Source: Macrostomum lignano
Taxonomy: Eukaryota
Assembly: GCA_002269645.1 (NCBI GenBank)
Contig: NIVC01001937.1
Location: forward strand, 1-64,000
Length of the DNA: 64,000 bases
Direction: 5' to 3'
Part shown: positions 1-64,000 of the stretch, piece after piece
Numbering within the stretch: position 1 is the stretch's first letter
Layout of the letters: every line of letters begins with the position of its first letter
The notes under the pieces: generated by a model
What the model was told of the DNA's origin: nothing
Databases searched by the model: none
What the model saw: only the letters and a program-made list of their open reading frames with translations
Translations under genes and position numbers: made by a program

Positions 1-2480
<2,480 letters not shown>

Positions 2481-2572
2481 CTGCCAAGGGAGTGTGCAGT
2501 GAGAATTGGGTTTTGATGCGGTGCAGCCCTCACACTGGCACCCAGTCTCTTGCCTGGGTGTCTCTTGTAAGT

Positions 2573-2702
2573 GCCCACTGTCTGCCCCGCAGCACCCACT
2601 GTCTGCCCTGCAGTGCCCACTGTCTGCCCTGCAGCACCCACTGTCTGCCCTGCAGCACCCACTGTCTGCCCTGCAGCACCCACTGTCTGCCCTGCAGCAC
2701 CA
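2573..2702. repeat. 21-nt minisatellite (CCCACTGTCTGCCCTGCAGCA), intronic
   Basis: About 6 units inside intron 2759-2481. Confidence 0.9.
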
Positions 2703-33543: not shown

Positions 33544-33555
33544 AACAACAACAAC

Positions 33556-34950: not shown

Positions 34951-34964
34951 ATTGAGAACCCTAT

Positions 34965-35364
34965 GGTTCTCAATCAAACAATGGGTGTCATAGACCGCAC
35001 CAAAGTTGGCTATTCTCCCCAACTCTGTGCTTCCATTCGACAACACAAAACTCTTTGAACATGTACGCCCAGAAGTTACTGATCAGTGCCACATCTGTAT
35101 TGTGCTTATCATTATCGGCATGAGCAGCATCGGCTCTTAAATTGGAAAAGTCATATAGAAGCCACTTCTTAGACTGTGGAAACTGACCAATGACGAGCAA
35201 CCGTTGTACTCGAATGTGAAATTCTGCGTTTGACCTGGACTAAAATTAGTTTCATCCTGGTTCTCATGACTAGGAACTCTAACTTGTGACGCTTTGATGG
35301 TGCTGTCATCACTCAAAATTGGTTTGTTAATCATGCAGAAAAATGGTGTCAGAGGATTGTTCAT
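34965..35364 (-). pseudogene. Polinton/Maverick major capsid protein, 5' part
   Basis: MNNP...KPILSDDST...P...N..PG, then ALISNFWAYMFKEF and NGSTELGRIANFG. This resembles the MCP N-terminus and is collinear with the 28400-29034 part across the inserted retroelements. Confidence 0.55.
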
Positions 35365-35799: not shown

Positions 35800-37315
35800 A
35801 CACGAATCCGATTTACTCAAACTTTACTCGACTACATGATTAGAAATCAGGAAAAATATCTGACGTTAAATAAACAGAGATCTGGAATATAAAAGTGAAA
35901 ATCAACATAAATTAACTTCTTTCGACGCGTTTCGGTCCAACAAGGGCCATCTTCAGGGTCTGATGTATTTTTATACTCACACACAACAACTTTTATCAGA
36001 GATAAAAAGAACAAACGTTTACTGTACAGTCCAAAGGGCGTATCAGGGCAGAGTTTTTTTAAAAGTGAGCAAAGATTATGAGTACACTGATCAGGTTAGT
36101 GCCTTCACTTAGAACACCTTTGAGCAAATGGCCCGCACCACTATGGGAAAGCTGAATATTAAGATTTGGTTTTTAGTTTTTAATGTACATGGATTCGAGT
36201 ATATTGAGCCGAAAGTCAGTCCTACACCGATCAATAATTTTGAACTGCTGAGTTTCCTCAATTTCGCAACAGCTGTTGCAACAGAGCAGGTGGTCTTGGA
36301 TAGCCGACCTTTTCAACCAATGCTCTCTGACTCTGGTGTACAAGTGCCTTTTAGTTTTACCTATATAGGAAATGTTCTGGTCAACAGAATAAGAGAACTT
36401 GTACACAACACCTGCCACCAGAGCAAGAGGAACGTGAGAACCTAAATTTGTGTGATTCAAAACTCCGGAATCAACGGTGTTTGACAATGTCAGTGAAGTT
36501 CAAGAAGCTCTCATCCGAAGACAACTCAAGCTCAATGCCCAGAAAGCAAGAAAACTGCAAATGCAAACTCGAGGCTTCAAGCTAAGACTCAAAGACAAGT
36601 TGAGCTTGCTGACCTACGCCGTGCTCTCTCAACTCGTCTCACGAGCTGTGAATGTCCAAGCCAAACAAGACCATACGAGACTGGAGGCAAAATTGGGTAG
36701 ACTATGGCTCGAAAGCAGACTAAGAGTCATCCCCGAACCCAGTCACCAATCTATCGAAGCACAAACTCTCTCCAGAAGAACACCAATGTCTACAACGAGG
36801 ATTCAGGCATCCGGTCTTACCATCCAAGCTCAACAAATTACATATAGCTGCTGAAATCGAGAGCACCGTGGGTAAGTACCTCTCGCTTGGTAATGCTGGA
36901 GACAATGGGCCGCACCAACTTGATGAAAGATTTAGAAACAGAATTATTGCTGATTTTGAACAATTTGTGACTTTTGCAAGCAATTTTATTGCTAGCAAGA
37001 AAAATAGGCTTACTCATAAGACCATGAAAGGCCTTAGGGAGAACAAAGAGATAAAAATCATTAGCTATGACAAAGGATATGGCGTTGCCATCATGGACAC
37101 CAATGATTACAACATGAAAATGAACGAGATTGTTCAATACCAATCCGAATTCCACTGTCTGGGAGCTATTACTGAAGTTTCCACTGCGCATCCTGTTCTG
37201 AAAGCGGAGAGATCCTTGCAGAGTTTCCTGCGCAACCATGTGAAACAAGACGAAATTTTCAAACGCATCATGCCAAATGGTAGCCAGCCTGGTCAACTCT
37301 ATGGCGTTTGCAACG
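35800..37315. mobile_element. Penelope-like element remnant in inverted arrangement: GIY-YIG 3' end on minus (36487-~36110), ORF 5' part/RT start on plus (36477-37310)
   Basis: VVYKF...SYIGKTKRHLYTRVREH (GIY-YIG); IKIISYDKGYGVAIMD and GSQPGQLYG (PLE RT N-terminal motifs). Confidence 0.85.
35924..35956 (-). ncRNA. Minimal hammerhead ribozyme core in the Penelope 3' region
   Basis: CTGAAGA-T-GGCCC ttgtt GGACC-GAAA-CGCG-TC; stem I pairing is poor. Confidence 0.7.
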
Positions 37316-39272: not shown

Positions 39273-40082
39273 CGTGGTAGGTTAGCACGGGTAGGTAAGC
39301 TACGTGGTAGGTTAGCACGGGTAGGTAAGCTACGTGGTAGGTTAGCACGGGTAGGTAAGCTACGTGGTAGGTTAGCACGGGTAGGTAAGCTACGTGGTAG
39401 GTTAGCACGGGTAGGTAAGCTACGTGGTAGGTTAGCACGGGTAGGTAAGCTACGTGGTAGGTTAGCACGGGTAGGTAAGCTACGTGGTAGGTTAGCACGG
39501 GTAGGTAAGCTACGTGGTAGGTTAGCACGGGTAGGTAAGCTACGTGGTAGGTTAGCACGGGTAGGTAAGCTACGTGGTAGGTTAGCACGGGTAGGTAAGC
39601 TACGTGGTAGGTTAGCACGGGTAGGTAAGCTACGTGGTAGGTTAGCACGGGTAGGTAAGCTACGTGGTAGGTTAGCACGGGTAGGTAAGCTACGTGGTAG
39701 GTTAGCACGGGTAGGTAAGCTACGTGGTAGGTTAGCACGGGTAGGTAAGCTACGTGGTAGGTTAGCACGGGTAGGTAAGCTACGTGGTAGGTTAGCACGG
39801 GTAGGTAAGCTACGTGGTAGGTTAGCACGGGTAGGTAAGCTACGTGGTAGGTTAGCACGGGTAGGTAAGCTACGTGGTAGGTTAGCACGGGTAGGTAAGC
39901 TACGTGGTAGGTTAGCACGGGTAGGTAAGCTACGTGGTAGGTTAGCACGGGTAGGTAAGCTACGTGGTAGGTTAGCACGGGTAGGTAAGCTACGTGGTAG
40001 GTTAGCACGGGTAGGTAAGCTACGTGGTAGGTTAGCACGGGTAGGTAAGCTACGTGGTAGGTTAGCACGGGTAGGTAAGCTA
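39273..40082. repeat. 27 perfect copies of a 30-nt unit (CGTGGTAGGTTAGCACGGGTAGGTAAGCTA)
   Basis: Consecutive 60-nt lines are identical throughout. Confidence 0.98.
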
Positions 40083-40314
40083 GATGCTAGGTTAAGTCAC
40101 TGGTTGGCAGCAGCTCTGAGTGTCTGAGTCTGAGCCTACCACGGCCGATCGGGTACACTGAGAGAGAAAAAATCTCTCTCCCCCTAAACCCATGATCTCT
40201 TTCATGCACAAGCTCCTCGTCTCCGCGTGCCTTTCTGCCCTGGAAAAAACATAATTATTATTAATACAGCAGGCCCTACTATCCTTGCTTGCTCTCCTGC
40301 TGCCCAATCTGAAC

Positions 40315-46745: not shown

Positions 46746-49623
46746 TCAGAGGAAGAACAGCCGGTCGCAAATCTGCGGACTCGGCTCCTCCATCAGGTTC
46801 TGGCCGACCAGGTACGCTAGCCTATGAGCGTAGTGACACGGCGCTGGCACGCGAATCGTGCCGGGCCAGTTAAAGTACAGGTGGGTCAGCTTGTACGTCA
46901 GCTGCTGCACCTGGTCCGGCTTGATGTTGGCGTCATTCACGTCCTCAATCATGTTGTAGTGAGTCGGCGTGACCGTGCCCTGGTTCACGTACTGCGACAC
47001 CAGGAAGAAGTCCACGAAGTTCGGCATCGTGATCACGTCGTCCAGCACGGTGCCGGGGGCCGGGTTCCTCAGCTGGCTGCCCTGCTTGCGGAACATGCGA
47101 GAGCTGACCAGCTTCTTCACCACAATGGCCTTGAAGCCGAGGCTGCTCATGCGCTCGCCGTAGATTTTTGACAGCGACTGCTTCAGCTGGAGCAGCTCCG
47201 AGTTCTTCACCTGCAAACATGATAACATGAATTATAATAATGCACTTGGCGCCAATTTCAGACAACTACTTGAGCAAAAGCTCACCTCCTCCAGCATGGA
47301 GTCGCCCACACCGTCGCGGTACAGGATGATCCGGGTAGGCAGGTCGCCGTTCTTCTCTCTGAACTTCTGCAGGGCCAAGTTGAAGCCGACCTCCAGCCTG
47401 TTGTGCAGCTCGGCTTTGCCTCCCTTTACGATGGGCGAGTACGAGTAGTACTGGGTGAATGTCTCGTTCAGCGAGAACACAATGCCCTGCACCGAGACGC
47501 TCTGCCGCTTGTCGTGATAAGTGTCCATCCCGACGATCATCGTGCGCTTCATCGGGATGCTCACAGCCCAGGCCACGCCGCCCAGCTTGCAGGAGATCTG
47601 CAGGGCCACCTTTGTGGCAACCGACATCACCTTGGCCGGGTTGCGGATGGTCTTGGTCAGGACGCACTGGCTGGGGACCGGCTTGTTCACGTAGCACAGT
47701 CGCTTGATGGAGTCGTAGCGCTGCTTCTTGTTGCTGGGCAGCAGGCAGAACACCAGGTCCAGGCCTTGGTCGATGTTTTCCTCAATCGTCTTCACCCACA
47801 GCTGGTCTCGGTCCTGCGCCACTGCCAGCACGTAGGGCTCGCCGAACGACATGCCGAGTGACTGCGAAGCCCGACTCAGCTTCTGGCAGAAGTCGGCGGC
47901 CGCCTGCTCGTCTCGCTGGGAGTACACGAAGATCCAGTTCTTGCAGTTCACCGGCTGAAACATGCCGTTGCCCTTGAGAGCATTGTCCCAGTCAGCGCGC
48001 TCAGGGTCCACCCTGATGGGTTTAGTCATCTGGACGGTCTCCGGAGCCAGCTGGCGGGCGGTGGCCTCCACAGCGTTGGGCGCTACCGCCAGGCCGAACT
48101 CTCCCAGCACCCGCTGGCACTCCCGGTTTTGGGCCATTGTGCTTGCAAATTTTACCAGCTTGCCGCACCGAGTTGACGGGTCAATCCGAGTGAAGGTGGC
48201 CAGGTCCTTCATCAGGTTTCGGTCGGCCCGCATCTCATCAGTCAGACCGGTCATAAAGCAAACCTCTGGCGGCAGAAGAACGTTCTCAGCCTGCTCTCGG
48301 CGGCCTCCCTTAGTCGGCGGCAGATCTCGCTTGCGCGGCTTCGACATCAGAATCGGCTGCTCACTGTCCGACAAATTGACATTGTACGTCTGGGCGAAGT
48401 ACTGGGCCAGCGAAATCTCCTCGCTCTGGCGAGTGCTCTTATTGTACCTGGGGAAGGTCTCAGTTACTCGCTTATCCCATTCGATTGCGTCAATACGATA
48501 CGTCTTGTTGTTGTGCCGCGTGAGCACTATCTGCCCCACCAAGGCGTCGGTGGCTGCGGCTTGGAAATTGCCGGGATTGCGATTGTACATGTCGTACATC
48601 ACATCCAGAACCGTGCTCATGTGGATGATCTTGTGCGACACGTCAACATGCAGCATCAGAGGTCCGTCAGACGGCTTGATGGCCATCTCGAAGCCGGGCC
48701 ACACCTGGTAAAGGCGATCGAAGAATATTGAGTGAGAGGATTGAGAGCTTGAGAACAAATTTCAATTGTAACTAAAGTTAACTGCAACAGCAGAGCAAAC
48801 CGCTTACCTCCATGCGATGCTGTGGAAGCTTCGTCGCTTGGTCGGGGTAATAAAAGTTTCTGCCGACCATTTGCATGTTGAGGTGGCTCTGGGTTTTTCC
48901 AAGCACTACGTTCATCAAGTGCAACCACTGAGGCGTGTTCTTTTCGATGACGCCAACCTGTCTGATGGCCACTTCTCCGCTCCACGACTTGATGCTGGCA
49001 GCAAACTTTACTCCCTCGGCAGGCGCCAGGGGCTGCTTGGTGTACAGGCAGCCGCCATCGTAGACAAACGGCTTTGGCACCTGCTGGGCATCGTTCAGTA
49101 GCTTCTCGCGCAGCGGCTTCGCGCCCAGCATCGGGCGAAAGTCGGCGGCCAGCTGGTAGGCGCACCATTTGTCCTCGGTGTTGATCCGAACGAAATTCGT
49201 CATCACCTGCACCGGGGCTCCGCTGCTGCCCTTCTTGCCCGCAGCTCCCTCCGGCCGAACATTCGCCAGCTGGAAGCGCAGCAGCTTTCGTTGTAGGCCG
49301 CCTCGGTCGCCGCTGGCTTCGCCGCCAACTCGCAGGCCGGCCATGCGCTCAGACAGCTGGCCCGGATCTCCGGCCTGCTGCGCAGCACCGCCACGTTCGA
49401 CAGCGCGGCCAACACCGCGTCCAGTATTCTGCTGGTCCCCAGGTGGACCAGCAACACCAGCTTGAGCACTCAGGCCTGGTGGTGGAGCTGGACGAGCAGC
49501 AGCGACTGGGGCAGGGGCTGGAGCTGCTGGAGCTGGGGCGAAGCTGGCGCCAGACGAAACCTCCTCAGGGCGTGGGCCTGAGCGACCTCGGGCACGACCG
49601 CGGCCTTTAGGCTGTTGAGACAT
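46746..49623 (-). CDS. piwi: Piwi-clade Argonaute, copy A, 899 aa; exons 49623-48808, 48704-47286, 47210-46746
   Basis: RG-rich N-terminus, PAZ (LTRHNNKTYRIDAIEW), MID/PIWI (LQISCKLGG, GMDTYHD, YRDGVGD, QGTVTPTHY, LTHLYFNWPGTIRVPAPCHYAHRLA...LFFL*). Two canonical phase-0 introns (103 and 75 nt). Catalytic D-D-H residues are present. Confidence 0.97.
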
Positions 49624-49685
49624 GCTGAGTAACTTGGATTGTTGAATAGCATGCAGTAGTGCAAGAAGCATTATAGTGACAACAG

Positions 49686-52610
49686 AAAAAGCAATTTAAA
49701 TGGCATTCTAAATAGAGCTCAGACAAACTCTTTTGGCATACAAAAAATCTCTTTCAAACTTTCTATGCACATTTTGGCATACAAATTCATGTCATTTTTT
49801 GACATAAATATAAGCATATTAATGTAAAGTTTAGAAAACTTTGTATACTCTAAAAAAGTCAAAGATATTCTCTTTGTTTTTTTATTATTAAAATTATATA
49901 AAATCAGTGAAATTATTGCTAAAAACTACAGTTATTCATAATTGTTTTTTGAGGCATAATTTTATTTTATTTTAAAATGAGAATGTTCATACATCTAAGA
50001 AGACTTTTCTTACAAAAAATTCTTTAAAAAACTCACAAAGATAAATTACCTTTTTAAAAGAAATTTTGGTAAACATTTTTGAGAAATTTCTATTTTTGGT
50101 ATATACTAGCATACATTTAGCTAAGATAGGATTCTTATTCTACCATACACTATTACACAATCTGGACCCTGGCTTTCTTCCTTTTTGCCACATTGCTACC
50201 AAGTTGGAAGGGCCAATGCTAGTTCACATTGGTCAGAGATTTATAGCTAATCAAAAAAAGCATGAAGACAGAGGGGGGCATACATTGTAGAGGTTTATTT
50301 GAAAAGTGCAGCAATAAGCCAATCACAAAAAGTGGCATTTTCCAATAGGGTTGGTATATACTTTGGTATTTTTATATACAATATTGGTATACATAGGCCC
50401 AGCATACTATGAACTATGAACATAGATAAATTTAAAAGTGGCATATATTTTGGCATAAAATATTAACTATGGCTATGTTTAGCCTAGTTTTTAGGTCTTA
50501 AATAATATAATTATCATAAATTATTATAAATGACTGCTTAAATGAAAAGTATAATTTTATAGAAATATAAAATATAAGTAGATAGACTTAGTCAATATAT
50601 AGTCAGTTAGTAGGCATGGGGTAGATGCAGATCCAGCAGACCTAGATAACTTAAGCAGTCATACAGACATATATATAAACTATATAGAAACTTACAATTG
50701 TATATATATATATATATAATATAATTGTAAATTTCATATTCTCATATATTTATGTATGTATAATTGATTTAAAAATATTTTTATTAAGTATACAACATTT
50801 TAGTAGGTTATTGAACAACCTAACATTATACTTTAAAAAATATATTAATATAGTGAAATGCTTGTATAATGAGAAAATTTTAACATTTGGATAGAATTGT
50901 TAAAATACACTGCCAATATATATTTTAGATCTAGATAAAAACAATTGAACACTTTCATTTGGCCAAGATATTACTTTACTGAAAAGCACTTTTTTAACAA
51001 TTCATTTATTAACATGGCTACTTTCCAATGTGAGACGCATTGCAGCATTCTATATTATATAGAATATAATATAGGACATAGCTGCTAGGTATATGAAATT
51101 TGCTTTCCAAAGTCTGATTGCCAAACTTGCTTTGTTGAACTTTTATTTATAGAATTTTGCTTGTGGAAATTTGCCTGCTAAAGTTTGCTTATTGATCTTT
51201 GCTTGTCAAACTTACAAGTAAATGTTGTACCCCCATAGCTGTCATAAATAAGCTCTAATATTATAGGCATAATAGTTTGGCTGTCTATAAAATAGCTATT
51301 GAATTGAGACTACATTGTACATGGGATAAAACAAGCAATAAATTATTAAATAAGTTTAGTGAGTAGCAACATCCCCTCTATCTCCTAAGGAGATAGATCA
51401 AAAGCAAGACAGAAACTAAAGGACAAAGTAGAAATAAGTAGGCCTAGGTCATAGATAAGAGTTAGGCTAGGGAATAGCAAAGTAATCAATTGACATGCTA
51501 AAAAAGCCCAGCCAGGCTGGTTATTTGTTGGCCAATATTGCAATATAGATCTAGATAAAATGATTGAATTAAGGGTCAAACAAGATCTTAGCAATCTTTC
51601 AATTTCCTAGGTCTACTCTAAATTATTTAAACCCTTTTTTGAACTTTTTAGAGTCCAACAAGCTCATAGAGTTCTTGCAAAAATTCACAGAGTTCTACAT
51701 AGGGTAGGCCTAGTAATATGTTATCTAGTAGAGAATATAACCAAAGTGCTAATGGGGATGGGGGAAAGCTTGACACCACATAAACTTTTATAAGTATGTT
51801 TTAAACAAATTATCACTGGTTCTGTGCATAGCTTAAAAGTGGCTTTGCAGTTGCCCCACATTCCCTCTATAGTATTTATATAAGTTGCTGGGTTGTTGGG
51901 GTCTCGAATTATGCAATGAATAGTTGACTAATGTGTTATAGGTAGCCTATTGGTCTGGGGTTTAAATAGGCCTAATTTAGAGTGGGAAACCAAAGGATTG
52001 CCTAAGATCTCAATCTTGATCTCAATTATCAAGATCTTGGCACTTTTCTAAATCTCAATCTTTAAGATCTAAGAGTTTTAAGATCAAGTTACTCAATATT
52101 ATATAATTGTTTTTCACCTATTATTAGATCTATCAGTGACATTATATATATAACATATTTAACAAAAAACAATATTAGCACTATTAGGCCCTCATCAGAT
52201 AGAATAGAACAGTAGGCCTTTAAATACTAAATAGGCTATTCAGTGCTAATTAGACTAGGCTTATCTTGAATCACAAAAGTATAATCTTGAGTCTTGAAAA
52301 TCTTGAAAATCTTGAAAATGTGATATTGTCCAACCCAGGCTGCCAGGCAAGCCCTAGACTTAAGTCTAAATGACTAGATCTAAGTTTGGATCTTGGAGCA
52401 AAAATTGGGACTAGGCGGCTAGGCCTAGGGCATTGGGATAGATTTTGAGTCTGAGTGTTAGGGAATCAGGGCATCAGGGTATTTTTGGTCTTAAATGGGC
52501 CTATATTCTGGGGCATGTATCTGCATGCTATGATCCTAACTATGGGCCATGGGGCATATCTGCATATATAATCTTATATTCTTTATCTGTAGATATTATA
52601 GGCCTAATGG
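49686..52610. other. CpG-depleted AT-rich block immediately upstream of piwi copy A
   Basis: 3 CG dinucleotides counted by eye in ~2.9 kb, versus about 18 in the next ~480 bp. Confidence 0.85.
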
Positions 52611-54067
52611 ATTACGAGTATAATATAGCACTGTACATTTCTTAGGGCCTATACGCCGTATGGATTTTAAGTGTATAAATATACTCAACAATTAGTCACG
52701 TGCTGCTAGTGCCATGCCATCCAGCATTCTCTAGGCCTACTTTATGCAAGTCGACATTTTTTGCACTCAAGATTATTAAAAATCGATGCATTCTTCTACG
52801 CAAGGCATGCGCGGGGACGGGTGGTACTTTTGACAGTTGTACTAGGTGTAGATAATTGCATAACTCGACGAGCCAATTAGGGCTTATACAACACAAGTAC
52901 AACATTGGGTTCATAAACGAGAGACGTCCGAGTACTTGCCAAACGATTTCCGATAAAATAGTCAGAACATTTTGCATTAAATACTTAAAACAAATATATC
53001 GTTACTTAGGAAAAGGAAGAATCAACTAAGGAATTTAGATTCCACTAATGTTTTTTTATTGTTTTATACAAGCATTTACGAAGTTCATAATTAGGACAAT
53101 GATAATGAATTTTGATTCTCTTTTTCAATGATTGATGCCTACTAGAAGTAGTAGTTAGGGTGGATACGGGGATGTATCCCCCATTTTGATTATTTATTGA
53201 AAACGAAAATTAGGTTTTCTTGAAAAAAGCAAAATAAAACGGCTTAGACTTAGCAAAATTGCCAAAAATTAAATTACTCGTAAATTACTAATAAAAAGTT
53301 TTAAACGATATTTCCGCAAACCCCTATATAGTTCCTAAAATGCCCTAGAGGCTCTTCATTTGCTTGTTCTGGTTCTAGAACCAGAACCATTTTGTAAAGT
53401 ATAACTTTTTGTCTCATAAACTAGAGGGATATTAGTGCTTTAAAATTGTGATTATTGAATGGCAAAAGCCAAGAACAAAGTGAAAAATGGTGCAAAGTGA
53501 GGCTGTTAAGGCCAGTCAAACATTCAACAAAGTTAAATAGTTATACTGTTTTTTTTCTTGGAAATCCAAACCGATTCTGGTTCTCGAATCGATTGCCGTG
53601 AAGAGGCTCCTAGTCAGGACGTCTGCCAGCTTTATTCTGATTTTAACAAAGTAAAGTGTTTTAGCCTAATAAACATGATTTTGATGATACTTTTTAAATG
53701 CATATTGAAAGCAAAAATAGAAAAAAAAACTATTTTATTAGTCTATAAAAGCATGCTTTAGTGCCAGTCTGACAATCCAGTTGTTTTATATATCATCATT
53801 GGCTTGGCGCATTGGTCTTATGAATCTATTTTTATCATTCGATCTTAGCTGACTGTGTAACAAATTTGTGTAACAGATATGATAAAATAGATTCATAATT
53901 ATAAAACCTAAGAGCAAGCTGTACCACGAATTTTTATGATTTGTACGCACAAGGAAAGTCACGTAGAATAAAAAATAACATACAATGTAGGCTTTAAATT
54001 TTCTGAACGAAAAGCTTTATGAATATCAATGCAGAATTTTAGTGCAGAAAAAAATTAAAACTTCCTA

Positions 54068-55598
54068 CAGTGGCGCACAATGAATTAAGACCAACTAACA
54101 CAAATTCGAACTAACTTCATAACCTACACAGATTGCGGGAGCATTTTGATCTAATCAGATATAGATAACCATGGTATCAATCAATTAAATTAGTAATTTG
54201 TTGGGTCATTACACGCGATTGAGTGTGCTTAATTGGAGTCCCTTATATCACTTTCGAATTCGATAAGTCACACAGTAATAAGACACCTAATTAATTGGGC
54301 TATAGGGTGTTATAAAAGTGTCCCTGCTGATTCTGAAAGTCCAAAACATCTAATTAAGTACTATACCCCAAGCAAAAAGTTATCTCGAACTCTTCTAGAA
54401 TAGGGAAAGGCAGAGCTCCATCGCCTGAGTCGTGTCCAGCAAGCCCTCAAGCCCCTCAGCAGCACAGGCTGTGCCCCAAGACTTGGCAGGGCACCGAAAA
54501 CTGACCACCGACTGGATCGTCGCATCGTGCGAATGCCCGAGTCCAACCGTCGGCTCACCGCTGTGGACATCAGCCGTGATTTCTGGTTTCCAGAGGTGTC
54601 CAGCTGCACCCAATGACTGTCCGCCACCGTTTGGTAGCTGCCGGACTGCATGGCCGCATTGCTAGGAAGAAGCCATTTATCTCCGACAAAAACCGGGAAG
54701 CGGCGCTTGAACTGGCCGAAGCAGCATGCAAGCTGGACACCCCAGGACTGGGCCAAGACCATCTGGAGTGACGAGAGCAAATTTTCCCGCACTGTTTCTG
54801 ATGGCTGCCGGTGTGCGCCGCCGAGCTAGTGAGGAATTCGATCCCAGGTGCACTGTTGGTACCATGAAGCATGGAGGTGGCAATGTCATGGTGTGGGCTG
54901 CGTTCTCTAGAGCTGGACCTGGGCCAAAAACTGGCATTGAGAGCGTCATGGACAGTTAGAAGTACCGTGACATCCTCAGCAGCCACCTACCAGAGGCAGC
55001 AGATGACAGTTTCAGCAGGACAACGATCCCAAGCACACCTCAAAGATTTTGAAGGTATGGCTTGCTGATAACAACATCCACACCATAGACTGGCCAGCGC
55101 AGTCACCAGACCTCAATCCGATTGAGAATCTGTGGAACTGGGTCGAGTGGGACATCCAGAGGCAGCAGCAGCCATCTTCCCTTGGTCAGCTGTACCGTGT
55201 CATTAAGGACTCGTGGGCTTCCATCGCGGCAGAAGTGTCCCAGAAGCTGGTGGACAGCATGCCTAGGCGGTGCAATGTTGTGATTAAGTCAAAAAGACAT
55301 GCTACAAAGCATTAGAGTAGATAGTTTGGTATCAGTGACATTTGCTTTACTTATTTCCCTAGTATTTATCTATGGTCTTATTTCAATGTTCAACCTAAAA
55401 CTGTACTTCCCATTCAAAGATCAGCATTTTGAACTTAAACCTGCTGGAAATTGAACAAAAATACTATACAAACAACAAAAATTAATATTTCTACAAGCTT
55501 TACTTCCAATTTAGTACTTGAATTTAGCTTAAAGACCGGCCAGTATGGCAAAGATAAAATAATTTTACTAGGTGGTCTTAATTAATTGTGCGCCACGG
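54068..55598 (+). mobile_element. Tc1/mariner (DD34E) transposon, 1531 bp, transposase pseudogene ~54363-55316
   Basis: 26-bp TIR CAGTGGCGCACAATGAATTAAGACCA with a near-perfect inverse copy and TA TSDs. Motifs WSDESK, KHGGGNVMVW, QDNDPKHT, WPAQSPDLNPIENLW. Confidence 0.95.
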
Positions 55599-56383
55599 TA
55601 TCTCCGTAGTGTATTTTTTCTGATAAACCTGCTGCTCCCTAAAACTTTCCAAGAAACGTAGTGTCGTGCCACTATTATGTTTCCAGAAATTTCTAAGCTT
55701 GTATACTTACTACTAGTACTATACTACTTGCCAACTGTTCATCATTTGGGATATAATCAAAGTGACCATTATGGGCTACTTAAAAGTAGTAGTGATCGTT
55801 CACGATCGCGAATATAAGGAGGTTAAAAATTTAGTTTTTTGTTTTGCTTTCCCAAGAAGTTTAGTTCCCAAAGAATTATTTGAAACTGCAGTATTTTGTT
55901 TGCTTAAGCTGTGCGGAGGTTTATTGCAGCGAAGTTCACAATCTTATTCCTCAGCTGGCGTACCGCTCAACCTCGGTAATTTCTTGTAAATCTGCTTTGC
56001 ACTGCAATGGGTTCCCCACGGGATGGAACTGCCTGGCGCATCGCTCAGTAGGTCCGAGCCCTGTGTTGCCACCCTCGTCACGAGTTCCTAAGTCTCTACT
56101 GAGAAGTAGGATCTCGCGAGAGTGCGGCTTCCAGCGCCACCTTTAGCTGCGGCCACTGCAACTGTGCCGGCGAATCGGATCGGACTTTATGTTTCACAAC
56201 CTCCTTGTTGCTGCTAATATGAATGCTATGATAGGCTGAAGCATTGAGTAGATATTTAAGAAGCGTGGTACATAGCTCTTCTGGCTTCGGACCCCAAGGA
56301 TGAATCAGGAAGAATGCTAGGTTTCGATGGAGATTTGAATTATGATGCAAGTGAAGGTGCCATGTGCGCCGTAGTGAACAAAC

Positions 56384-58675
56384 TGTAAGGCAGGTATGTG
56401 CTAGAACGAAACGGTCTTGAAAACTGCTAAGACGCGCAAGGTTGACTATATACTCGTATATTTGGGGGTCGTGCCAGATTGCAACAACCCCACCTCATAC
56501 AACCGATAAGATGTACATGCAATGAATTACTAAACATACACGATTACACTCAAATAGGCAAGCAGTGTACACTTCACATCACTCCCTTCCAAAGTCGAAC
56601 CGGATTAGGGACTAAAATTTGAGTAGCGAAATCCGAGTAGCGAAAATTCGATTATCAAAAATTCAAGTAGTGAAAAAAATCGAGTAGCGAAATATTTTAA
56701 TTCAAACGAAACCGCAATGTAACTCCTACTAAATTGAATATTAGCAAATTATTAAAGACACGTACATGGACTTAAAACTGGGCCACATAAAAATCAGGCG
56801 GCCTTCGGTCCCTCCCAGACCGCCGAGGCTGGTATCGGTGGCTGGCAGGGGCCCCTTGATGTCCACCTGCACAATCTCCCAGGGCAGTGACGGCACCAAG
56901 TTGCTCTGCAGCGGCGCCCGCTGATGCTAATGAGGCACCTTGCGATGCTGGCAGTTCACGCAGCTGTTCACCCAGTGCTGCACGTCCTCTTTGATGCTCG
57001 GCCACCAGCCCTTGCCGTCGATCCTTGCCAGAGTGCGCTCGGGCGCAAGGTGTCCGCTCGGTGGGTCATCGTGCGCCAGCCTTAGCAGCTCCTGACGGAG
57101 CTGCAACGGAATGGCTGGCTCGCCGCCGCGCCTGATGATGCCGCCGTCGTCGATCTCCAGCCGTTCAGCCGCCACGATTGCTGCTGCCTCGACCGCTGGC
57201 CTGCCTTGCTGCGGTGTCTGACCTGTAGGGAGCTTCCGAATGGCAACCAGCACCGCATCGGCCTGCTGTGCGTCAAGGATGTCGCTGGTGGTCCAGGCAG
57301 GCGCCAGCCGAGTCGCCGCTGCCCTGCTCAGCGCATCCACCACGACATTGTCCTCACCAGGTCGGTAAAGCAGCTTGAAGTTCACTTCTTGGAGGGTGGT
57401 GATCCATCGGGCAAGACGGCCTTCGGGCTCCTTGGTGTTCAGCAGACCCTGCAGCAGCTTGTGATCAGTGAAGACCAACACGCCGCTCACCGAGGCCAGG
57501 TAGTTGCGAAAGTGCTTCATCGCCCACACGATCGCCAGCAGATCCCTGTGAGTCGTTGAATAGTTGCGCTCGGCCTTGTTAAGCACTCTCGAGGCGTAGG
57601 CGACCGGGCACTCGACACCTTCGTGAAGCTGACTGAGGACACCGGCGATGGCCACGCCGCTGCTGTCGCAGGTCAGCTGGAACTCTTTGGAGAAATCAGG
57701 CAGCCGCAGCACCGGTGGGGAAGTCAGCGCTGCTTTCAGCTTCTGCAGGGCTCGCTCGCACTCCTCCGTCCAGGAGAACCGCCGTCCTTTTTGAGTGGCC
57801 TGGTGGAGCGGGCTGGCGATTCTGGCGAAGTGCGGGACGAACCGGCGATAGAACCCCAGCATGCCGACCAGCCGGCGGACGTCCTCTGCGCAGGTTGGTG
57901 TCGAGATGGCCTTTATCGCGCTGATCTTTTCCTGAGTCGGACGGATGCCTTCTGCTGAAATCACGTGACCCAGGTACTCGACCTCCTGGTAGCAGAAGCA
58001 GCTCTTGCGCTTGTTGAGCTTGAGACCGGCTGACTGGAGCCTCTCCAGGACTTTCTCGAGCGTCTGGACGTGGCTGTCGAACGTCGAGCTGAACAGGATC
58101 AGGTCGTCCATGTAGGTGAGCACCTCCGTCCAGTTCATGCCGCACATGGTCAGGTCCATGAGACGCTGGAAGGTTGCAGGTGCGTTGCACAATCCGAACC
58201 CCAGCTTCTTGTACTGCATCAGGCCCTGAGTGCTGTAGAAGGCAGTCTTCTCGCGGTCCTGCTCTCTGATCTCCACCTGAAGAAAGCCCTGTCGAAGATC
58301 TAGAGTGCTAAACCAGCTACTCCCCGTCAGCGCGTCCAGGGCGACGGACAGCGGAGGCAGCGGGTAGGCGTCGCGTTGCAAGCGTTGTGCACGCGTTGAG
58401 AGCTCTCCAGTCAGTACAAATGCGGATGTCGTTTTTCTTACGAACAACAAGGAGGTTGTTCGCCCACGGGCTGCACGACGGCTCGATGATGCCGTGACGC
58501 CGCATCTTGCTGATCTTGTCGTCCACCTGCTGCCGGAAGCTGAGGGGGACCGTCCGCTGCCGCTGCTTGATAGGACGGCTGCCGGGCTCCCGGTTGATCT
58601 CATGCTGCAGCAGAGGTGTCGTGCCGAGGTCGAACTCGTGGCTGGCGAACGATTTTTCGTGCTGGCGAAGCAGCC

Positions 58676-58738
<63 letters not shown>

Positions 58739-59970
58739 AGGATCGCTGAGCGCCGGGTTGATGTTGAAGTCAGCATCCTCGCTGTTGCTGCTGTCGCGCT
58801 CCGCGAGTTCCGCCGCATCGAAACTGCCAATCGCCTGATTCTCGTACAGCATCACTGGGTCGGCACCCAGGTTGCAGACGCCCACGGGCAGGCCACCTTC
58901 AGTGTTGGACACCGCGAGCACCCTGTTCGACAGCAGCCCCGTCTTGTCAGTGAAGTCAGAGTTCGGCTCAAAAAGCCCTTGCTCAGAGGAGGAGTCCACT
59001 TTAACAGGAACGATATTGCGGCTGCGTGCTGGCACCTCGACAGTGCGGGCCACCCTCGCGATCACGGCATTCGGAACCACTCGGCAAGCCTGCTGGAAGC
59101 CGTCGTTCTGTAGAATCGGTATCTTAGCCGGTCCCAGCTGGACAGAAGCAGCACCCAGGTCCACGCTAAAGGCGGACCCCATCCTGCCGATCGCATCCAT
59201 GCCGAGAACGCACTCAGGCTGAATGCCTGCAACTACTGTCACTTGGTGAACAATCGGTGGGAGTCCTTGCAGCTGCACTGTCAGAGTCGCGCACGCTGGA
59301 GACTCTAGATGTCGGCCGTCGATGCCGACTGGAGCGCTGAGTGGCGGCTGAAGCTGCGCGTTGATGCCGAGGGCTCGTCGGCTCGTACCGACACGACTGG
59401 CTGGCGATGCTGCCGGGGAGGAAGATAGAGGCAGGTCGGGCCTTGCTGAGCAGGGCTGGTGATGGCCCACGGTCACCAGTCCTCAGCAGTTTTCCGAAGC
59501 CGGAGTTGGACAGGCCTCGGCGCGGTGCCCTCTGTCCGAGCAGCGGTAGCAGGTGATCTGGGGCGCTGAAGCGGACTGTCGGCTTGGGCATTGGGCGGCA
59601 AAGTGGCCAGGAATTGAGCAGTTGAAGCACCTGCCGCGGCCACCTCTTCCTCGAGCGCTGCCCCTGCCTCGACTGCCGCCTCTTCCTCCGCCCTGTTGTC
59701 CGCCGCGCATACCGATGGCGGCGACAGTGGCGGCCAGCTCCGTCAGCTGCCCCTGTATCCGGCCCAGCTGGTCTGCCATCGGATTGCTGGCCGTGGTCGC
59801 CGCTACGCTGGCCGTCGCTCCCCTGTTGCCATTGATGCTCTCCAGCGCTGTAGCGCGGTCAGCCATCGTCTCAGGACTGATAGTGTTGCAGTCAGATTCC
59901 TTCAGCAGCAATTCCCTGATGTCTCTGGTACACGATTACACTCAGATAGGCAAGCAGTGTGCACTTCACA
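56384..59970 (-). mobile_element. Ty3/Gypsy LTR retrotransposon, internally deleted; 3' LTR 56579-56384, 5' LTR remnant 59970-59929
   Basis: 4-bp TSD AAAC (56380-56383, 59971-59974); polypurine tract GGAAGGGAGTGA before the TGT LTR start; two CCHC knuckles; RT YMDDL; RNase H CDSSG; integrase zinc-finger region. Confidence 0.92.
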
Positions 59971-60799
59971 AAACAATTGTTGAATAGTGGCACAGGATGT
60001 TGCAATCAGAGAGAAGCCAGATTGCGCTTCGTTGTTAAGTGCGACACTATTTTATGGTTTGGTGGATTTCGAGCATGTCCATGTGAATATCAAATAGTTG
60101 CATCTCACTGTATCAAGCTTGTCGACTTGCTCTGAATGACGTGGCGTATCTAACTTGCTGTTCAACTTCTCCAGGTTGCTCTCCCAGCGGGTGTCAATGA
60201 CCTTGACGGCGGCATGTCCACTCTCCGGGTGCTCCACCGTAACTGCAGTGTCTGCCGCCTGCTTTCCATAGTGTTGCTGGGTTTGTCTTCTGGTCTCTCT
60301 CTTCCTCTCACAGTGCGATTTTTGTTTCGTGGAACAGCGGCTTGACCAGGATGGGGATGTCGCCGTGCTCGTCAATTGTGTAATCATTTCTACCGTGTCT
60401 AAGTCCGTCAAGTACATCTGTTCATCCGAGGGTACTTGCTGCTAATATGAACGTTGTATTAGGTGCTATTACGATTTCACAGCGAAAATAAATATTTAGG
60501 AAAGTTGAAAAAGTCCAGTGCCCCTTTTCCCTGTCATCAATTGTCACGGGAGTGTTACTTTGCTTCTCAGGTTGCAGCTGTGTTCACTTGCTGTTCCAGG
60601 TCTTCAGTCTGGACACACTTCATTGGTGAATCGCTGTCGCTGGTGTCTGTTTGAATCGCTCGGCCTGAAGTCGGGTAGCATCACATGCGGTGTTAGCGTG
60701 GGCATGATTTTCAGTCTGTCAGTATGTACCTAAAATGACTCCTGATTAGGGTTATCGATCTTCCTGATTGTTACTGAGGTCTGGCGATGCTTCTTCACG

Positions 60800-62380
60800 A
60801 TCTCATATCGTCCTGTAAATTTAACATGATGTTTGCCCTGTTTCATAGGTTACTTGCAGCATAACCCTGCTGCCTACTTCTAGAGTAGACGGCTTGCGGT
60901 TTTTATTGGCTCTTTCAGTGTTTTTCTTCTGGGCTACCTGTAGGTGGTGTCTGACAATTTCTCGTGTCAGCATTATGCACTCTTGCATTCGGGCTGCAAA
61001 CGAGGTTTCATTCATGTACTTGACCAGGTTCAATTGGGTTGTAAGCTGCATGGACATTATTTAGTGGTTTTCTGGCAAAGACTAGCTCGAATGGTGAGTT
61101 TCGCTGTGTTATAAGCCAACGTTGTGGCTTGGAGGTACTTATGCCATTGGTTTTGATTTTCGGTGGTGTTGGAGCAATATGTCGGAGCATATTTTGGAGA
61201 GTCGAATGTAGACGTTCCACGTGATTAGCTCTTGGGTTGTAGGGTGACGTGAGAATGTGTTTTATCCCTAGGATCTCCAGGGCTTCGGACAGAAGTGTGA
61301 CAGTAAAGTTCTTGCCACTGTCTGTTGACATTGCAGCTGGGATCCCAAAGGTACAAAAGACTGAGAACAGTGTCTCTGCTGTCGTGTCTGCTGTAAGATC
61401 TGGGATCGGAATCGCGAATGCGAATTTCGAAAAACAGAATAGGATCGTAAGTATGTGTGCCACTGTCTCGTTCCGAATATTTGTTGGGACCATGGGCCCT
61501 ACTATGTCCTCTGACAACTAGTCCATTGGTTTCATTGGGATTTGAATCAGTGAACAAAGAATTGAATCAGTTCTTTGTGAATTTTTCCTGACTTATTTCT
61601 ACCACAATTAATGCAGTCGTTACAGAATCCCCAAATGTCTGAGATCATGGCGATCCAGAAGTAACTTCGGCGGATTCTGTCTAGGGTTTTCGAAAACTGA
61701 ATTTGGAACTGTTGCAATCGGAGTAGCCATCTGAGTATCTGGTTATTGATCTGTAGGATCTTGCCTGTTAACAAGCCTCGTAGTGGGGCATGATCTACTC
61801 TCATGAGCGTAGGGATTGGAGCGGCATAAAGGAATTGCTCAAATGTTTTGAAGGCGTGGTGTAGTAAAGAGGTTCCAGGTGGGTTGTTCCATATCTGGTT
61901 TCCGCGTCTCTGAGCTGTCTACTCGTGAACGCTATCGGTTTCTCCTTCCCTGTTTCGTCTACCTGTGAGAGCATGGCTCCTATTCCTTTCACTAGAGACG
62001 ATGAACCGTTGCTAAAGTCTGGATGGATCTTAGATCTTCGGCTATCCATCACTTCATCGCTTTGAACGTTTGGTTTGCTTCCTCTAACCATTTGCGTTTG
62101 GTATTCGAAGCTTATCCTTCCGAGTTCGGTGCTCCTTTGAGCTTGTCAGTCAAAGGCTGGGCCGTGTGCATAGTTCGGAATGTGCTTTCGGGCAAAATTG
62201 CGGAGTCCCAAAAATGCTCTTAACTGAGTTGAATTCTCTAGTTTTGGTACTATTTGCACTTTTTTTACTAAAGCTCGGTCCGTCTCCATTCTGATCAATT
62301 TTATGTCCCAGAAAGGTAATGGTGGGTTGGGCAAATCGACACTTATGCAGCTTTAGCTTCATTCCATGTTGGTTAAAAGT
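60800..62380 (-). mobile_element. Degenerate Ty3/Gypsy pol remnant (RT end, RNase H, integrase), truncated at the piwi copy B junction
   Basis: LKLHKCRFAQPTITFLGH; GIGAMLSQ...KPIAFTSRQL...RYGTT; DIVGP...FSKFAFAIP...FGIP...TDSGKNF...YNPRAN.VER. Confidence 0.85.
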
Positions 62381-62458
62381 GTTATTTAGATATAAACTGT
62401 TGTCACTATAATGCTTCTTGCACTACTTCCAGCTATTCAACAATCCAAGTTACTCAGC

Positions 62459-64000
62459 ATGTCTCAACAGCCTAAAGGCCGCGGTCGTGCCCGAGGTCGC
62501 TCAGGCCCACGCCCTGAGGAGGTTTCGTCTGGCGCCAGCTTCGCCCCAGCTCCAGCAGCTCCAGCCCCTGCCCCAGTCGCTGCTGCTCGTCCAGCTCCAC
62601 CACCAGGCCTGAGTGCTCAAGCTGGTGTTGCTGGTCCACCTGGGGACCAGCAGAATACTGGACGCGGTGTTGGCCGCGCTGTCGAACGTGGCGGTGCTGC
62701 GCAGCAGGCCGGAGATCCGGGCCAGCTGTCTGAGCGCATGGCCGGCCTGCGAGTTGGCGGCGAAGCCAGCGGCGACCGAGGCGGCCTACAACGAAAGCTG
62801 CTGCGCTTCCAGCTGGCGAATGTTCGGCCGGAGGGAGCTGCGGGCAAGAAGGGCAGCAGCGGAGCCCCGGTGCAGGTGATGACGAATTTCGTTCGGATCA
62901 ACACCGAGGACAAATGGTGCGCCTACCAGCTGGCCGCCGACTTTCGCCCGATGCTGGGCGCGAAGCCGCTGCGCGAGAAGCTGCTGAACGATGCCCAGCA
63001 GGTGCCAAAGCCGTTTGTTTACGATGGCGGCTGCCTGTACACCAAGCAGCCCCTGGCGCCTGCCGAGGGAGTAAAGTTTGCTGCCAGCATCAAGTCGTGG
63101 AGCGGCGAAGTTGCAATTAGACAGGTTGGCGTCATCGAAAAGAACACGCCTCAGTGGTTGCACTTGATGAACGTAGTGCTTGGAAAAACCCAGAGCCATC
63201 TCAACATGCAAGTGGTCGGCAGAAACTTTTATTACCCCGACCAAGCGACGAAGCTTCCACAGCATCGCATGGAGGTAAGCAGTTTGCTCTGCTGTTACAG
63301 TTAACTTTAGTTACAATTGAAATTTGTTCTCAAGCTCTCAATCCTCTCACTCAATATTCTTCGATCGCCTTTACCAGGTGTGGCCCGGCTTTGAGATGGC
63401 CATCAAGCCGTCTGACGGACCTCTGATGCTGCATGTTGACGTGTCGCACAAGATCATCCACATGAGCACGGTTCTGGATGTGATGTACGACATGTACAAT
63501 CGCAATCCCGGCAATTTCCAAGCCGCAGCCACCGACGCCTTGGTGGGGCAGATAGTGCTCACGCGGCACAACAACAAGACGTATCGTATTGACGCAATCG
63601 AATGGGATAAGCGAGTAACTGAGACCTTCCCCAGGTACAATAAGAGCACTCGCCAGAGCGAGGAGATTTCGCTGGCCCAGTACTTCGCCCAGACGTACAA
63701 TGTCAATTTGTCGGACAGTGAGCAGCCGATTCTGATGTCGAAGCCGCGCAAGCGAGATCTGCCGCCGACTAAGGGAGGCCGCCGAGAGCAGGCTGAGAAC
63801 GTTCTTCTGCCGCCAGAGGTTTGCTTTATGACCGGTCTGACTGATGAGATGCGGGCCGACCGAAACCTGATGAAGGACCTGGCCACCTTCACTCGGATTG
63901 ACCCGTCAACTCGGTGCGGTAAGCTGGTGAAATTTGCAAGCACAATGGCCCAAAACCGGGAGTGCCAGCGGGTGCTAGGAGAGTTCGGCCTGGCGGTAGC
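62459..64000 (+). CDS. piwi: Piwi-clade Argonaute, copy B (runs off window); exon 62459-63274, exon 63378->64000
   Basis: Near-identical inverted copy of copy A with the same 103-nt intron; open frame to the window end. Confidence 0.96.

What the first reader, a model, noticed from the sequence alone, without database searches (positions are those of the whole stretch)
49686..52610. Sharply bounded CpG desert beginning at the piwi A duplication breakpoint
Seen: 3 CG in ~2.9 kb (near 51035, 51905, 52416), against about 18 in the next ~480 bp of similarly AT-rich DNA. TG, CA and TA are abundant. Known: 5mC deamination erases CpG. Inference: this block had intense, localised germline methylation or RIP-like mutagenesis unlike its neighbours, directly upstream of a piwi start.
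Basis: partly seen in the sequence, partly recalled or inferred. Interest (0 to 1): 0.7.

Follow-up and report, generated by a model that had tools for sequence, protein, structure and literature searches.

The report
CpG-free palindrome-rich block beside piwi
A 2.9-kb stretch of non-coding, AT-rich DNA just upstream of a duplicated piwi gene really is almost devoid of CpG, unlike anything else in the window, but the usual fingerprints of methylation decay or RIP are missing, so its cause remains open.

Summary
Only 3 CG lie between 49602 and 52614 (CpG o/e 0.04 at 30% GC). The 164 other non-tandem 500-bp windows average 0.83. CpG density jumps about 25-fold at 52615.

The left edge is structural. 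It is the end of a 99%-identical, head-to-head inverted duplication of piwi that starts about 60 nt upstream of the ATG. The second piwi copy abuts a decayed retroelement instead.

The block is single-copy and non-coding, with no TE termini. It has two further anomalies: an excess of short palindromes, and local arrays of TAGGCCTA, AGATCT and TTGGYATAYA.

Classical RIP is refuted by the indices. A TpG/CpA surplus is absent or weak. Genes, TEs and tandem arrays nearby show no CpG decay or CpG hypermutability.

Simulations show the void needs either a CpG-specific rate at least 20-40 times background or arrival within about 2% divergence.

My best reading (confidence 0.35) is a CpG-specific purge confined to this DNA, probably local germline methylation with deamination. 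Rearrangement sharpened the left boundary. No functional link to piwi is shown. Genome-wide and methylation data are needed.

The parts
49686..52614 (.). CpG-void block: single-copy, non-coding, 30% GC, 3 CpG (o/e 0.04), GpC o/e 1.63
   Evidence: No ORF over 74 aa. No Pfam hit in six frames. No Rfam or tRNA hit. No homology to the rest of the window.
49602..49685 (-). CpG-free 5'UTR and core-promoter stub of piwi copy 1, inside the duplicated arm. It contains a TATAAT-like box and is shared with copy 2 (62397-62480).
   Evidence: The 5'UTR of the related transcript L001 is at least 44 nt.
46749..49625 (-). piwi copy 1 (PAZ and Piwi domains). It is intact against an 81%-identical relative, has one ~100-nt intron and a possible in-frame 69-nt intron, and has CpG o/e 0.85-0.9.
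48082..49685 (-). Arm 1 of the head-to-head inverted duplication. It is 99% identical to 62397-64000, with 17 differences. The arm length is cut by the window end.
62397..64000 (+). Arm 2 of the duplication (piwi copy 2, runs off the window). The sequence upstream of it is a decayed LTR-retroelement fragment, not the desert.
49733..50459 (+). Cluster of TTGGYATAYA motifs. All 5 exact copies in the window lie at 49733-50393, and all are on the + strand.
50653..50769 (.). TA-rich imperfect palindrome, about 124 nt at 73% self-complementarity, including a (TA)n run
50927..52381 (.). Eight AGATCT sites, mostly in palindromic 8-mer contexts (TAGATCTA x4)
51439..52739 (.). Array of isolated palindromic TAGGCCTA sites. 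All 6 exact copies in the window are here, GGCCTA occurs 16 times against 1.2 expected, and there is no flanking similarity. The array extends about 125 bp past the CpG step.
52615..53000 (.). CpG-dense patch immediately right of the desert: 49 CpG per kb, with o/e 1.19 over its first 480 bp at 36-42% GC. It contains CACGTG, TATAAATA and CCAAT words.
52615..54065 (.). AT-rich, CpG-normal flank (o/e about 0.9). No palindrome excess, no TE identity.
54066..55600 (+). Tc1/mariner remnant with 41-nt TIRs and a TA|CAGTG end, plus DDE_3 fragments
56537..59970 (-). gypsy-like LTR retroelement (gag zinc knuckle, RT, RNase H, integrase zinc-binding domain). CpG o/e 0.8-0.97.
60000..62396 (-). Older, stop-riddled LTR-retroelement fragment (RNase H, integrase core). 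It ends exactly at the breakpoint of piwi copy 2 and has CpG o/e 0.76.

Best explanation
The block is a real, single-copy, non-coding stretch of AT-rich, short-palindrome-rich DNA. It lies in the 12.7-kb TE-filled spacer between two head-to-head, 99%-identical piwi copies.

Its left edge is not an epigenetic boundary. It is the junction where the recently duplicated piwi segment, which begins about 60 nt upstream of the ATG, meets older DNA.

CpG is missing because a CpG-specific purge has acted on this DNA, and not on the genes, TEs and arrays around it, until very recently. The most likely purge is dense germline CpG methylation of this block followed by 5mC deamination. This could have happened in place or before rearrangement brought the block next to piwi. 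The host genome would otherwise be sparsely or not at all methylated.

The palindrome-rich, hairpin-prone character may also explain why a rearrangement breakpoint sits at its edge.

Shown: the void, its extremity, its boundaries, the non-coding single-copy nature, the palindrome and motif anomalies, and the need for an active or recent CpG-specific force.

Inferred: that the force is methylation with deamination, the germline timing, and the fragile-site link. No regulatory link to piwi is shown.
For: - Only CpG is missing. GpC is raised, at 1.63.
- The void is far outside the window's distribution. It has a 25-fold step at 52615, next to a CpG-dense patch, like a methylated/unmethylated domain edge.
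- The TAGGCCTA array runs about 125 bp past the step into CpG-containing DNA. So CpG loss is superimposed on this sequence class rather than intrinsic to it.
- Neutral simulation: CpG would exceed 3 after about 2% divergence. So the force is ongoing or recent.
- An equilibrium with a CpG rate at least 20-40 times background reproduces <=3 CpG.
- (CA+TG)/(AC+GT) is modestly higher than in controls, 1.36 against 1.26 as per-window means. The left half has TG/CA rho of 1.18.
- Animals with methylation restricted to particular non-genic targets are documented (PMC12460157).
- The best named relatives of the local gypsy element are from Macrostomum. That lineage is reported to keep DNMT1 and DNMT3 with low 5mC of unknown pattern (PMC11292947, PMC9246332).
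- The left edge equals the duplication breakpoint.
- Palindromic 8-mers: 58 against 21 expected, z = 7.9. Mean DNA-fold z is -0.76 against -0.17 in controls (my means).
Against: - There is no TpG/CpA surplus by base-composition normalisation: 1.08 against 1.05-1.18 in controls, and 1.01 in the right half.
- The context-resolved test predicts a x1.25 rise and observes x1.02, with r = -0.1.
- The required hypermutability (at least 20-40 times) exceeds that of mammals.
- The expected methylation targets nearby keep their CpG. This includes an old, stop-riddled retroelement fragment at o/e 0.76.
- The recent mutation spectrum shows no CpG excess.
- Methylation does not explain the palindrome excess, the motif arrays, or the high CC/GG and TA.
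- The host, its DNMT complement and its methylome are unknown.
Confidence: 0.35

Rival explanations
1. Distinct-origin fragment. The block is a recently arrived piece of DNA that was already CpG-free where it came from. The source could be another compartment of the same genome, such as heterochromatin, or a foreign donor. Its composition reflects that source, not events at this locus.
For: - Both halves share a dinucleotide profile unlike all 11 control segments: CC/GG 1.24-1.42 against <=1.09, AA/TT about 1.0 against 1.03-1.26, and low AC/GT.
- The palindrome excess and the motif arrays are confined to the block.
- There is no deamination footprint.
- The low CpG count requires arrival within about 2% divergence. 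That fits the young neighbourhood of 99%-identical duplicates and intact TEs.
- The left edge is a rearrangement junction.
Against: - There are no TIRs, LTRs, TSDs or coding remnants.
- There is no match in the phage, plasmid, viral or metagenome collections.
- I know of no genome whose bulk DNA has CpG o/e near 0.04, so a purge is still needed somewhere.
- The TAGGCCTA array continues into CpG-bearing DNA past 52615.
- A CpG-blind 4-mer classifier trained on the left half does not separate the right half from other AT-rich DNA.
Confidence: 0.25
2. Functional, selected element. The block is a cis-acting region such as an array of binding sites, an origin, a boundary element or a cluster of tiny transcription units. 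In it, palindromic motifs are maintained and CpG is selected against, for example to stay immune to methylation.
For: - There are six isolated TAGGCCTA sites in 1.3 kb (expected 0.09 from a first-order Markov model, about 0.01 from base composition alone), with no flanking similarity.
- The TTGGYATAYA sites are all in the same orientation.
- CpG is absent without mutational by-products.
- The block lies next to a germline gene promoter.
Against: - The second, 99%-identical piwi copy lacks the block.
- Conservation cannot be tested.
- There is no RNA family or structure signal.
- Selection against every CpG over 3 kb of otherwise unconstrained-looking DNA has no precedent that I know of.
Confidence: 0.1
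3. RIP-like burst. An enzymatic C-to-T hypermutation process that targets duplicated DNA hit this block once.
For: - The block is AT-rich and sharply bounded, and it lies next to a duplication.
- TpA/ApT is 1.05.
Against: - The composite RIP index is -0.31, the same as controls.
- (CpA+TpG)/(ApC+GpT) is 1.36, not below 1.03.
- The block is single-copy in the window.
- The real duplicate arms differ at only 17 sites with no C-to-T excess.
- There is no TG/CA surplus in the contexts that carry CpG.
- RIP is unknown in animals.
Confidence: 0.04
4. Artefact. The block comes from an assembly mis-join at the piwi repeat, from contaminant DNA, or from systematic miscalling of modified CpG in long reads.
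For: - The left edge coincides with the end of a 99%-identical repeat, a classic place for mis-joins.
- The species could not be found in any public collection, so the sequence could not be cross-checked.
Against: - Two chimeric junctions would be needed.
- The right side runs continuously into AT-rich DNA and host-type TEs.
- The two arms carry 17 fixed differences, so they are separate copies.
- Miscalling of about 95% of CpGs, with no TG/CA surplus and normal CpG everywhere else, is implausible.
Confidence: 0.08
5. Chance, or cryptic simplicity. The block descends from expansions of short CpG-free words, like the many CpG-free tandem arrays in this window, and simply never contained CpG.
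For: - The window is full of CpG-free arrays.
- The block shows cryptic repetitiveness, with z about 8 for repeated 8- to 12-mers, and patches dominated by particular words.
Against: - Repeated 8-mers exceed expectation by only about 5% of positions, so most of the block is complex and unique.
- TRF finds only tiny remnants.
- DNA diverged enough to lose its tandem structure would have regained dozens of CpGs.
- Some controls are just as cryptically repetitive yet have normal CpG.
Confidence: 0.05

Closest known systems
Methylated, CpG-depleted compartments of animal genomes (vertebrate bulk DNA; mosaic or TE-targeted invertebrate methylomes such as the chaetognath Paraspadella gotoi, PMC12460157)
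   Same: CpG is lost specifically while GpC is retained. The domain is bounded and lies next to CpG-rich DNA. There is precedent for methylation aimed at non-genic targets while gene bodies stay unmethylated.
   Different: An o/e of 0.04 is lower than vertebrate AT-rich DNA (about 0.15-0.2, from my own knowledge). There is no clear TpG/CpA surplus. The local TEs, which are the usual targets, are not depleted. Methylation itself is untested.
Fungal RIP and RIP-generated AT-rich isochores (RIP described in PMC9246332)
   Same: A sharply bounded AT-rich block in a GC-richer setting. TpA is raised. A duplication is nearby.
   Different: The RIP indices are negative. CpA/TpG is not depleted. The block is not the duplicated sequence. 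The duplicated arms are unmutated. RIP is not known in animals.
Palindromic AT-rich repeats (PATRRs) and other hairpin-prone fragile sites at rearrangement breakpoints (my own knowledge)
   Same: The block is AT-rich, enriched in palindromes, slightly more hairpin-prone than controls, and sits exactly at an inverted-duplication breakpoint.
   Different: There is no long near-perfect palindrome. Only 8-34-nt palindromes and one ~124-nt imperfect one at 73% are present. PATRRs do not explain the loss of CpG.
Arrays of dispersed mini-promoter motifs without flanking similarity, such as the Ruby motif of nematode type-I piRNA loci (my own knowledge)
   Same: A short motif (TAGGCCTA) recurs every 130-450 bp in AT-rich DNA with no similarity around it.
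   Different: Only 6-12 sites. The motif is palindromic. There is no small-RNA evidence and no known factor. This is pure analogy.

Membership tests
Methylation-driven CpG-depleted domain | CpG o/e far below neighbouring DNA of similar GC, with GpC unaffected | tested here: met
   o/e is 0.04 against a window mean of 0.83. GpC is 1.63.
Methylation-driven CpG-depleted domain | Surplus of the deamination products TpG/CpA | tested here: inconclusive
   rho is 1.08 against controls at 1.05-1.18. The context test gives x1.02 against a predicted x1.25. The (CA+TG)/(AC+GT) index is modestly higher, 1.36 against 1.26 as per-window means.
Methylation-driven CpG-depleted domain | 5mC present on the domain in germline DNA | not testable with these tools
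   No reads or methylation calls are available.
Methylation-driven CpG-depleted domain | Host encodes DNMT1 and DNMT3 | not testable with these tools
   Only 64 kb is available and the host is unidentified. There is a weak TE affinity to Macrostomum, a lineage said to retain both enzymes.
RIP (repeat-induced point mutation) | TpA/ApT >= 0.89 together with (CpA+TpG)/(ApC+GpT) <= 1.03 (composite index > 0) | tested here: not met
   TpA/ApT is 1.05 but the substrate index is 1.36. The composite index is -0.31, the same as controls at -0.37.
RIP (repeat-induced point mutation) | The mutated sequence is itself duplicated, and both copies carry C-to-T changes | tested here: not met
   The block is single-copy in the window. 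The real duplicate arms are 99% identical with 11 transitions and 6 transversions.
Transposable-element insertion | Terminal repeats (TIR or LTR) and a target-site duplication at the edges | tested here: not met
   No pairing termini were found for either edge.
Transposable-element insertion | Coding remnants, or multiple copies | tested here: not met
   No Pfam hit in six frames. No other copy in the window. Genome-wide copy number is not testable.
Palindromic AT-rich repeat (PATRR) fragile site | A long (hundreds of bp), near-perfect AT-rich palindrome | tested here: not met
   The longest is about 124 nt at 73%. The rest are 8-34 nt.
Palindromic AT-rich repeat (PATRR) fragile site | Located at a rearrangement breakpoint | tested here: met
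   The block starts at the inverted-duplication breakpoint 49685/49686.

The most novel reading that the evidence does not exclude
An animal genome carries a domain-restricted, CpG-specific purging process. This could be hyper-efficient methylation-coupled deamination or another enzymatic route that leaves no TpG/CpA surplus. The process acts on a particular class of palindrome-rich, motif-studded AT DNA, which also marks rearrangement hotspots near germline genes. Such blocks would then be a recognisable genomic compartment with its own recognition motif (TAGGCCTA).
Probability: 0.12. Interest if true: 0.75.

Novelty: new variant of a known kind. Interest (0 to 1): 0.4.

Why it matters
If the void reflects local germline methylation in a genome whose genes and TEs otherwise show no CpG decay, it would be a sequence-only marker of a rare, sharply targeted methylation compartment. 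The host is a poorly sampled animal lineage whose methylome is unknown. The void is also more extreme than vertebrate depletion. If the block is instead intrinsically CpG-free and motif-defined, it points to an undescribed class of non-coding element tied to hairpin-prone DNA and inverted duplications. Either way, the claim can be tested directly once the whole assembly and native reads are examined. As a single locus with no comparative data, it is for now an intriguing anomaly rather than a discovery.

Tried and rejected
1. TE insertion. No TIR, LTR or TSD pairs with either edge, there are no coding remnants in six frames, and there is no second copy in the window.
2. Decayed tandem array. 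TRF at score 30 finds only tiny remnants, and the repeated k-mer excess is small and matched by some controls.
3. An old ~265-bp repeat suggested by the TAGGCCTA spacing. Pairwise local alignments are no better than shuffles.
4. ncRNA or tRNA-derived element. No Rfam or ARAGORN hit.
5. Phage, plasmid or vector DNA. No phage hit and one trivial low-complexity plasmid hit.
6. The same locus in public metagenome or viral contigs. No exact hits.
7. NUMT. No strand skew, stop-rich in all frames, no domains.
8. A first intron of piwi under gene-body methylation. The related transcript's 5'UTR is short and colinear, and piwi's own exons and introns keep their CpG.
9. A CpG-blind 4-mer classifier to show foreign composition. 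It was dominated by GC content and did not separate the held-out right half.
10. Host identification. The SPEF2-like ORF gave no hits. The SRA run id of the related transcript is in no paper. The chaetognath idea is unsupported. The gypsy pol points only weakly to Macrostomum-like flatworms, and the Wasik 2015 paper is not held.
11. The other low-CpG window at 28.0-28.5 kb. It is an ordinary short AT-rich stretch unrelated to the block.
12. Hairpin propensity. It is only modestly greater than in controls: mean z of -0.76 against -0.17, p about 0.07 (my means and t-test).
Full report
**Observation**

The count is correct. Inside 49686-52610 the only CG dinucleotides are at 51036, 51905 and 52416, and the following 480 bp hold 19. 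The CpG-free run really spans 49602-52614. Its first 84 bp belong to the duplicated piwi 5' stub.

The block is 30.4% GC, with CpG o/e 0.04 and GpC o/e 1.63. Base composition predicts 67 CpG. The Poisson probability of <=3 is 1e-19 at the local norm (o/e 0.8) and 7e-4 even at a vertebrate-like 0.2.

Every other CpG-free gap over 300 bp in the window is a tandem array whose unit lacks CG. In unique DNA the longest gap elsewhere is about 270 bp, against 1435, 869 and 511 bp here. In 500-bp windows that avoid tandem arrays, all 10 desert windows have o/e 0.00-0.11. The 164 others average 0.83 (SD 0.17). The lowest is 0.26 and overlaps the desert edge. A change-point analysis puts the right edge at 52615 (support 52380-52615), where density rises from 1.0 to 24.8 CpG per kb.

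**Setting**

The gene on the minus strand at 46749-49625 is a genuine animal Piwi. It has PAZ and Piwi domains. It is 81% identical to one unnamed transcriptome protein and about 41% identical to corals, amphioxus and bivalves. It has one ~100-nt intron and a possible in-frame 69-nt intron, and it reads through intact.

An inverted repeat, 48082-49685 against 62397-64000, is 99% identical and runs off the window. So two piwi copies lie head to head, 12.7 kb apart. The duplicated segment starts about 60 nt upstream of the ATG, just beyond a TATAAT-like box. The related transcript's 5'UTR is at least 44 nt.

Beyond that point, copy 1 meets the desert. Copy 2 meets a stop-riddled LTR-retroelement fragment with RNase H and integrase remnants and CpG o/e 0.76. 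The rest of the spacer holds:
- an AT-rich, CpG-normal segment at 52615-54065
- a Tc1/mariner remnant with TIRs at 54066-55600
- a gypsy-like element at about 56.5-60 kb

The 'sharp' left boundary is therefore a rearrangement junction, not an epigenetic one.

**What the block is not**

- It has no ORF over 74 aa.
- It has no Pfam domain in any of six frames.
- It has no Rfam or tRNA hit.
- It has no similarity to the rest of the window.
- It has no terminal repeats or target duplications at either edge.
- It has no phage or plasmid similarity.
- It has no exact match in metagenome or viral contigs.
- TRF at low threshold finds only tiny microsatellite remnants.
- Its cryptic repetitiveness is real (z about 8) but small in extent and matched by some CpG-normal controls.

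**What else is odd about it**

Both halves share a dinucleotide profile unlike all 11 control segments. CC/GG is 1.24-1.42 against <=1.09. AA/TT is about 1.0 against 1.03-1.26. AC/GT is 0.68-0.85. TA and AT are about 1.0. GpC is 1.4-1.9.

Palindromic 8-mers are 58 against 21 expected (z = 7.9), and both halves are significant. The right flank and five controls show none, with z from -0.4 to 2.0. Across the whole window, the other palindrome-flagged windows are tandem arrays or array edges, apart from a marginal 36001-37000 (z 3.7).

All six exact TAGGCCTA sites of the 64 kb lie in 51439-52739 and have no similarity around them. GGCCTA occurs 16 times against 1.2 expected. Eight AGATCT sites cluster in 50927-52381. 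All five exact TTGGYATAYA sites lie in 49733-50393 on one strand.

So three of the four self-complementary dinucleotides (GC, TA, AT) are raised and the fourth (CG) is nearly absent. As single-stranded DNA, the block folds slightly better than shuffles: mean z of -0.76 over 20 tiles, against -0.17 for 20 control tiles, which is a modest difference (my means). The TAGGCCTA array extends about 125 bp beyond the CpG step into DNA that contains CpGs. This suggests the CpG loss is superimposed on this sequence class rather than intrinsic to it.

Classical RIP fails. The composite RIP index is -0.31 (controls -0.37). (CpA+TpG)/(ApC+GpT) is 1.36, not below 1.03. The block is single-copy. The real duplicate arms differ at just 17 sites, 11 transitions and 6 transversions.

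For 5mC deamination the evidence is mixed:
- TG/CA rho is 1.08, within the control range of 1.05-1.18. It is 1.18 in the left half and 1.01 in the right.
- A context-resolved test predicts a mean x1.25 rise in NTGN and finds x1.02, with no correlation with the contexts that carry CpG in controls.
- The (CA+TG)/(AC+GT) ratio is modestly above controls, 1.36 against 1.26 as per-window means.
- There is no TG-versus-CA strand asymmetry.

Elsewhere in the window there is no sign of CpG hypermutability. Only 2 of about 14 independent arm differences are CpG transitions, roughly the share of sites that are CpG. CG columns in tandem arrays vary no more than other columns. Intact and decayed TEs and piwi exons keep o/e of 0.76-1.0.

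**Constraints from simulation**

Starting from the present sequence and evolving neutrally without CpG hypermutability, the CpG count exceeds 3 in 93% of runs by 2% divergence. It reaches about 20 at 10%. So either the purge is ongoing or very recent, or the DNA arrived CpG-free very recently. That timescale is similar to the 1% divergence of the piwi duplicates. Holding 2.9 kb at <=3 CpG at equilibrium needs a CpG transition rate at least 20-40 times background. It also predicts a TG/CA rho of about 1.2.

**Host**

The species is not in the protein collection, and the best Piwi match is 81%. The local gypsy pol is closest to two Macrostomum lignano proteins, at 51-52% against <=43% for other named taxa. 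That is a weak hint of a free-living flatworm-like host. Reviews state that M. lignano keeps DNMT1 and DNMT3 with low 5mC of unknown distribution, whereas planarians and parasitic flatworms lost them (PMC11292947, PMC9246332). Chaetognaths, ctenophores and early-branching nematodes methylate only TEs (PMC12460157). So sharply targeted methylation in an otherwise unmethylated animal genome is plausible but unproven here.

**Verdict**

A CpG-specific, locally confined force, or a very recent arrival from somewhere with such a force, is required. Methylation with deamination is the only established candidate, but its by-products are not clearly present. RIP is rejected. The left boundary is structural. 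The block carries additional unexplained features, namely palindromes and motif arrays. No functional tie to piwi is shown, because the sister copy lacks the block.

I commit to a local CpG purge by germline methylation and deamination of a hairpin-prone AT block, with boundaries sharpened by rearrangement, at confidence 0.35. The rivals are:
- a compositionally distinct imported fragment (0.25)
- a selected cis-element (0.10)
- an artefact (0.08)
- cryptic simplicity (0.05)
- a RIP-like burst (0.04)

About 0.13 is left unassigned for causes not listed here.

A genome-wide scan, methylation calls, a DNMT inventory, junction validation and an orthologous sequence would settle it.

Noticed in passing
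48082-49685 and 62397-64000: Head-to-head inverted duplication of piwi, 99% identical. The 17 differences include two tight clusters (49651-49654; 48964-48976) that look like multi-nucleotide or micro-conversion events rather than independent substitutions.
   Followed up: partly
54066-55600: Tc1/mariner remnant with 41-nt TIRs (85% match), a TA|CAGTG terminus and broken DDE_3 transposase frames. Its CpG o/e is somewhat low (0.39-0.49) in 54751-55750.
   Followed up: partly
56537-59970 (minus strand): gypsy-like retroelement with a gag zinc knuckle and a 558-aa open pol segment. A (CT)n microsatellite lies at 58677-58735, in the 75-bp gap between the two pol ORFs. The closest named relatives are two Macrostomum lignano proteins (51-52%).
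   Followed up: partly
29500-35000: GC-rich (about 60%) LINE-like element with a PHD finger, an endonuclease/exonuclease/phosphatase domain and reverse-transcriptase pieces on both strands. It may be two nested or opposed copies.
   Followed up: no
1-27100: Very high density of micro- and minisatellite arrays (about 20 arrays; units of 2-104 bp; up to 1.2 kb each). Most units lack CG, which creates trivial CpG-free gaps. Several arrays are strongly strand-skewed.
   Followed up: partly
39273-40094: 30-bp minisatellite of 27 copies, essentially 100% identical, with two CpGs per unit. It is a very young or actively homogenised array.
   Followed up: no
52615-53000: CpG-dense patch (49 per kb, with o/e 1.19 over its first 480 bp at only 36-42% GC) directly abutting the desert. 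It contains CACGTG, TATAAATA and CCAAT words and could be a promoter-like island, but no gene was identified.
   Followed up: partly
53801-54034 and 14081-14260: A short dispersed repeat (68-79% identity, partly inverted) shared by the desert's right flank and a distant AT-rich region.
   Followed up: no
47213-47281: The second piwi 'intron' is 69 nt, in frame and without a stop codon. It could be a retained insertion rather than an intron. The related transcript lacks it.
   Followed up: partly
1322-2683 (minus strand): A 453-aa ORF with a weak SPEF2_D5 Pfam hit found no homologue at E<=1e-5 in the 5.8-billion-protein collection. It is either a spurious ORF or a very fast-evolving gene.
   Followed up: partly
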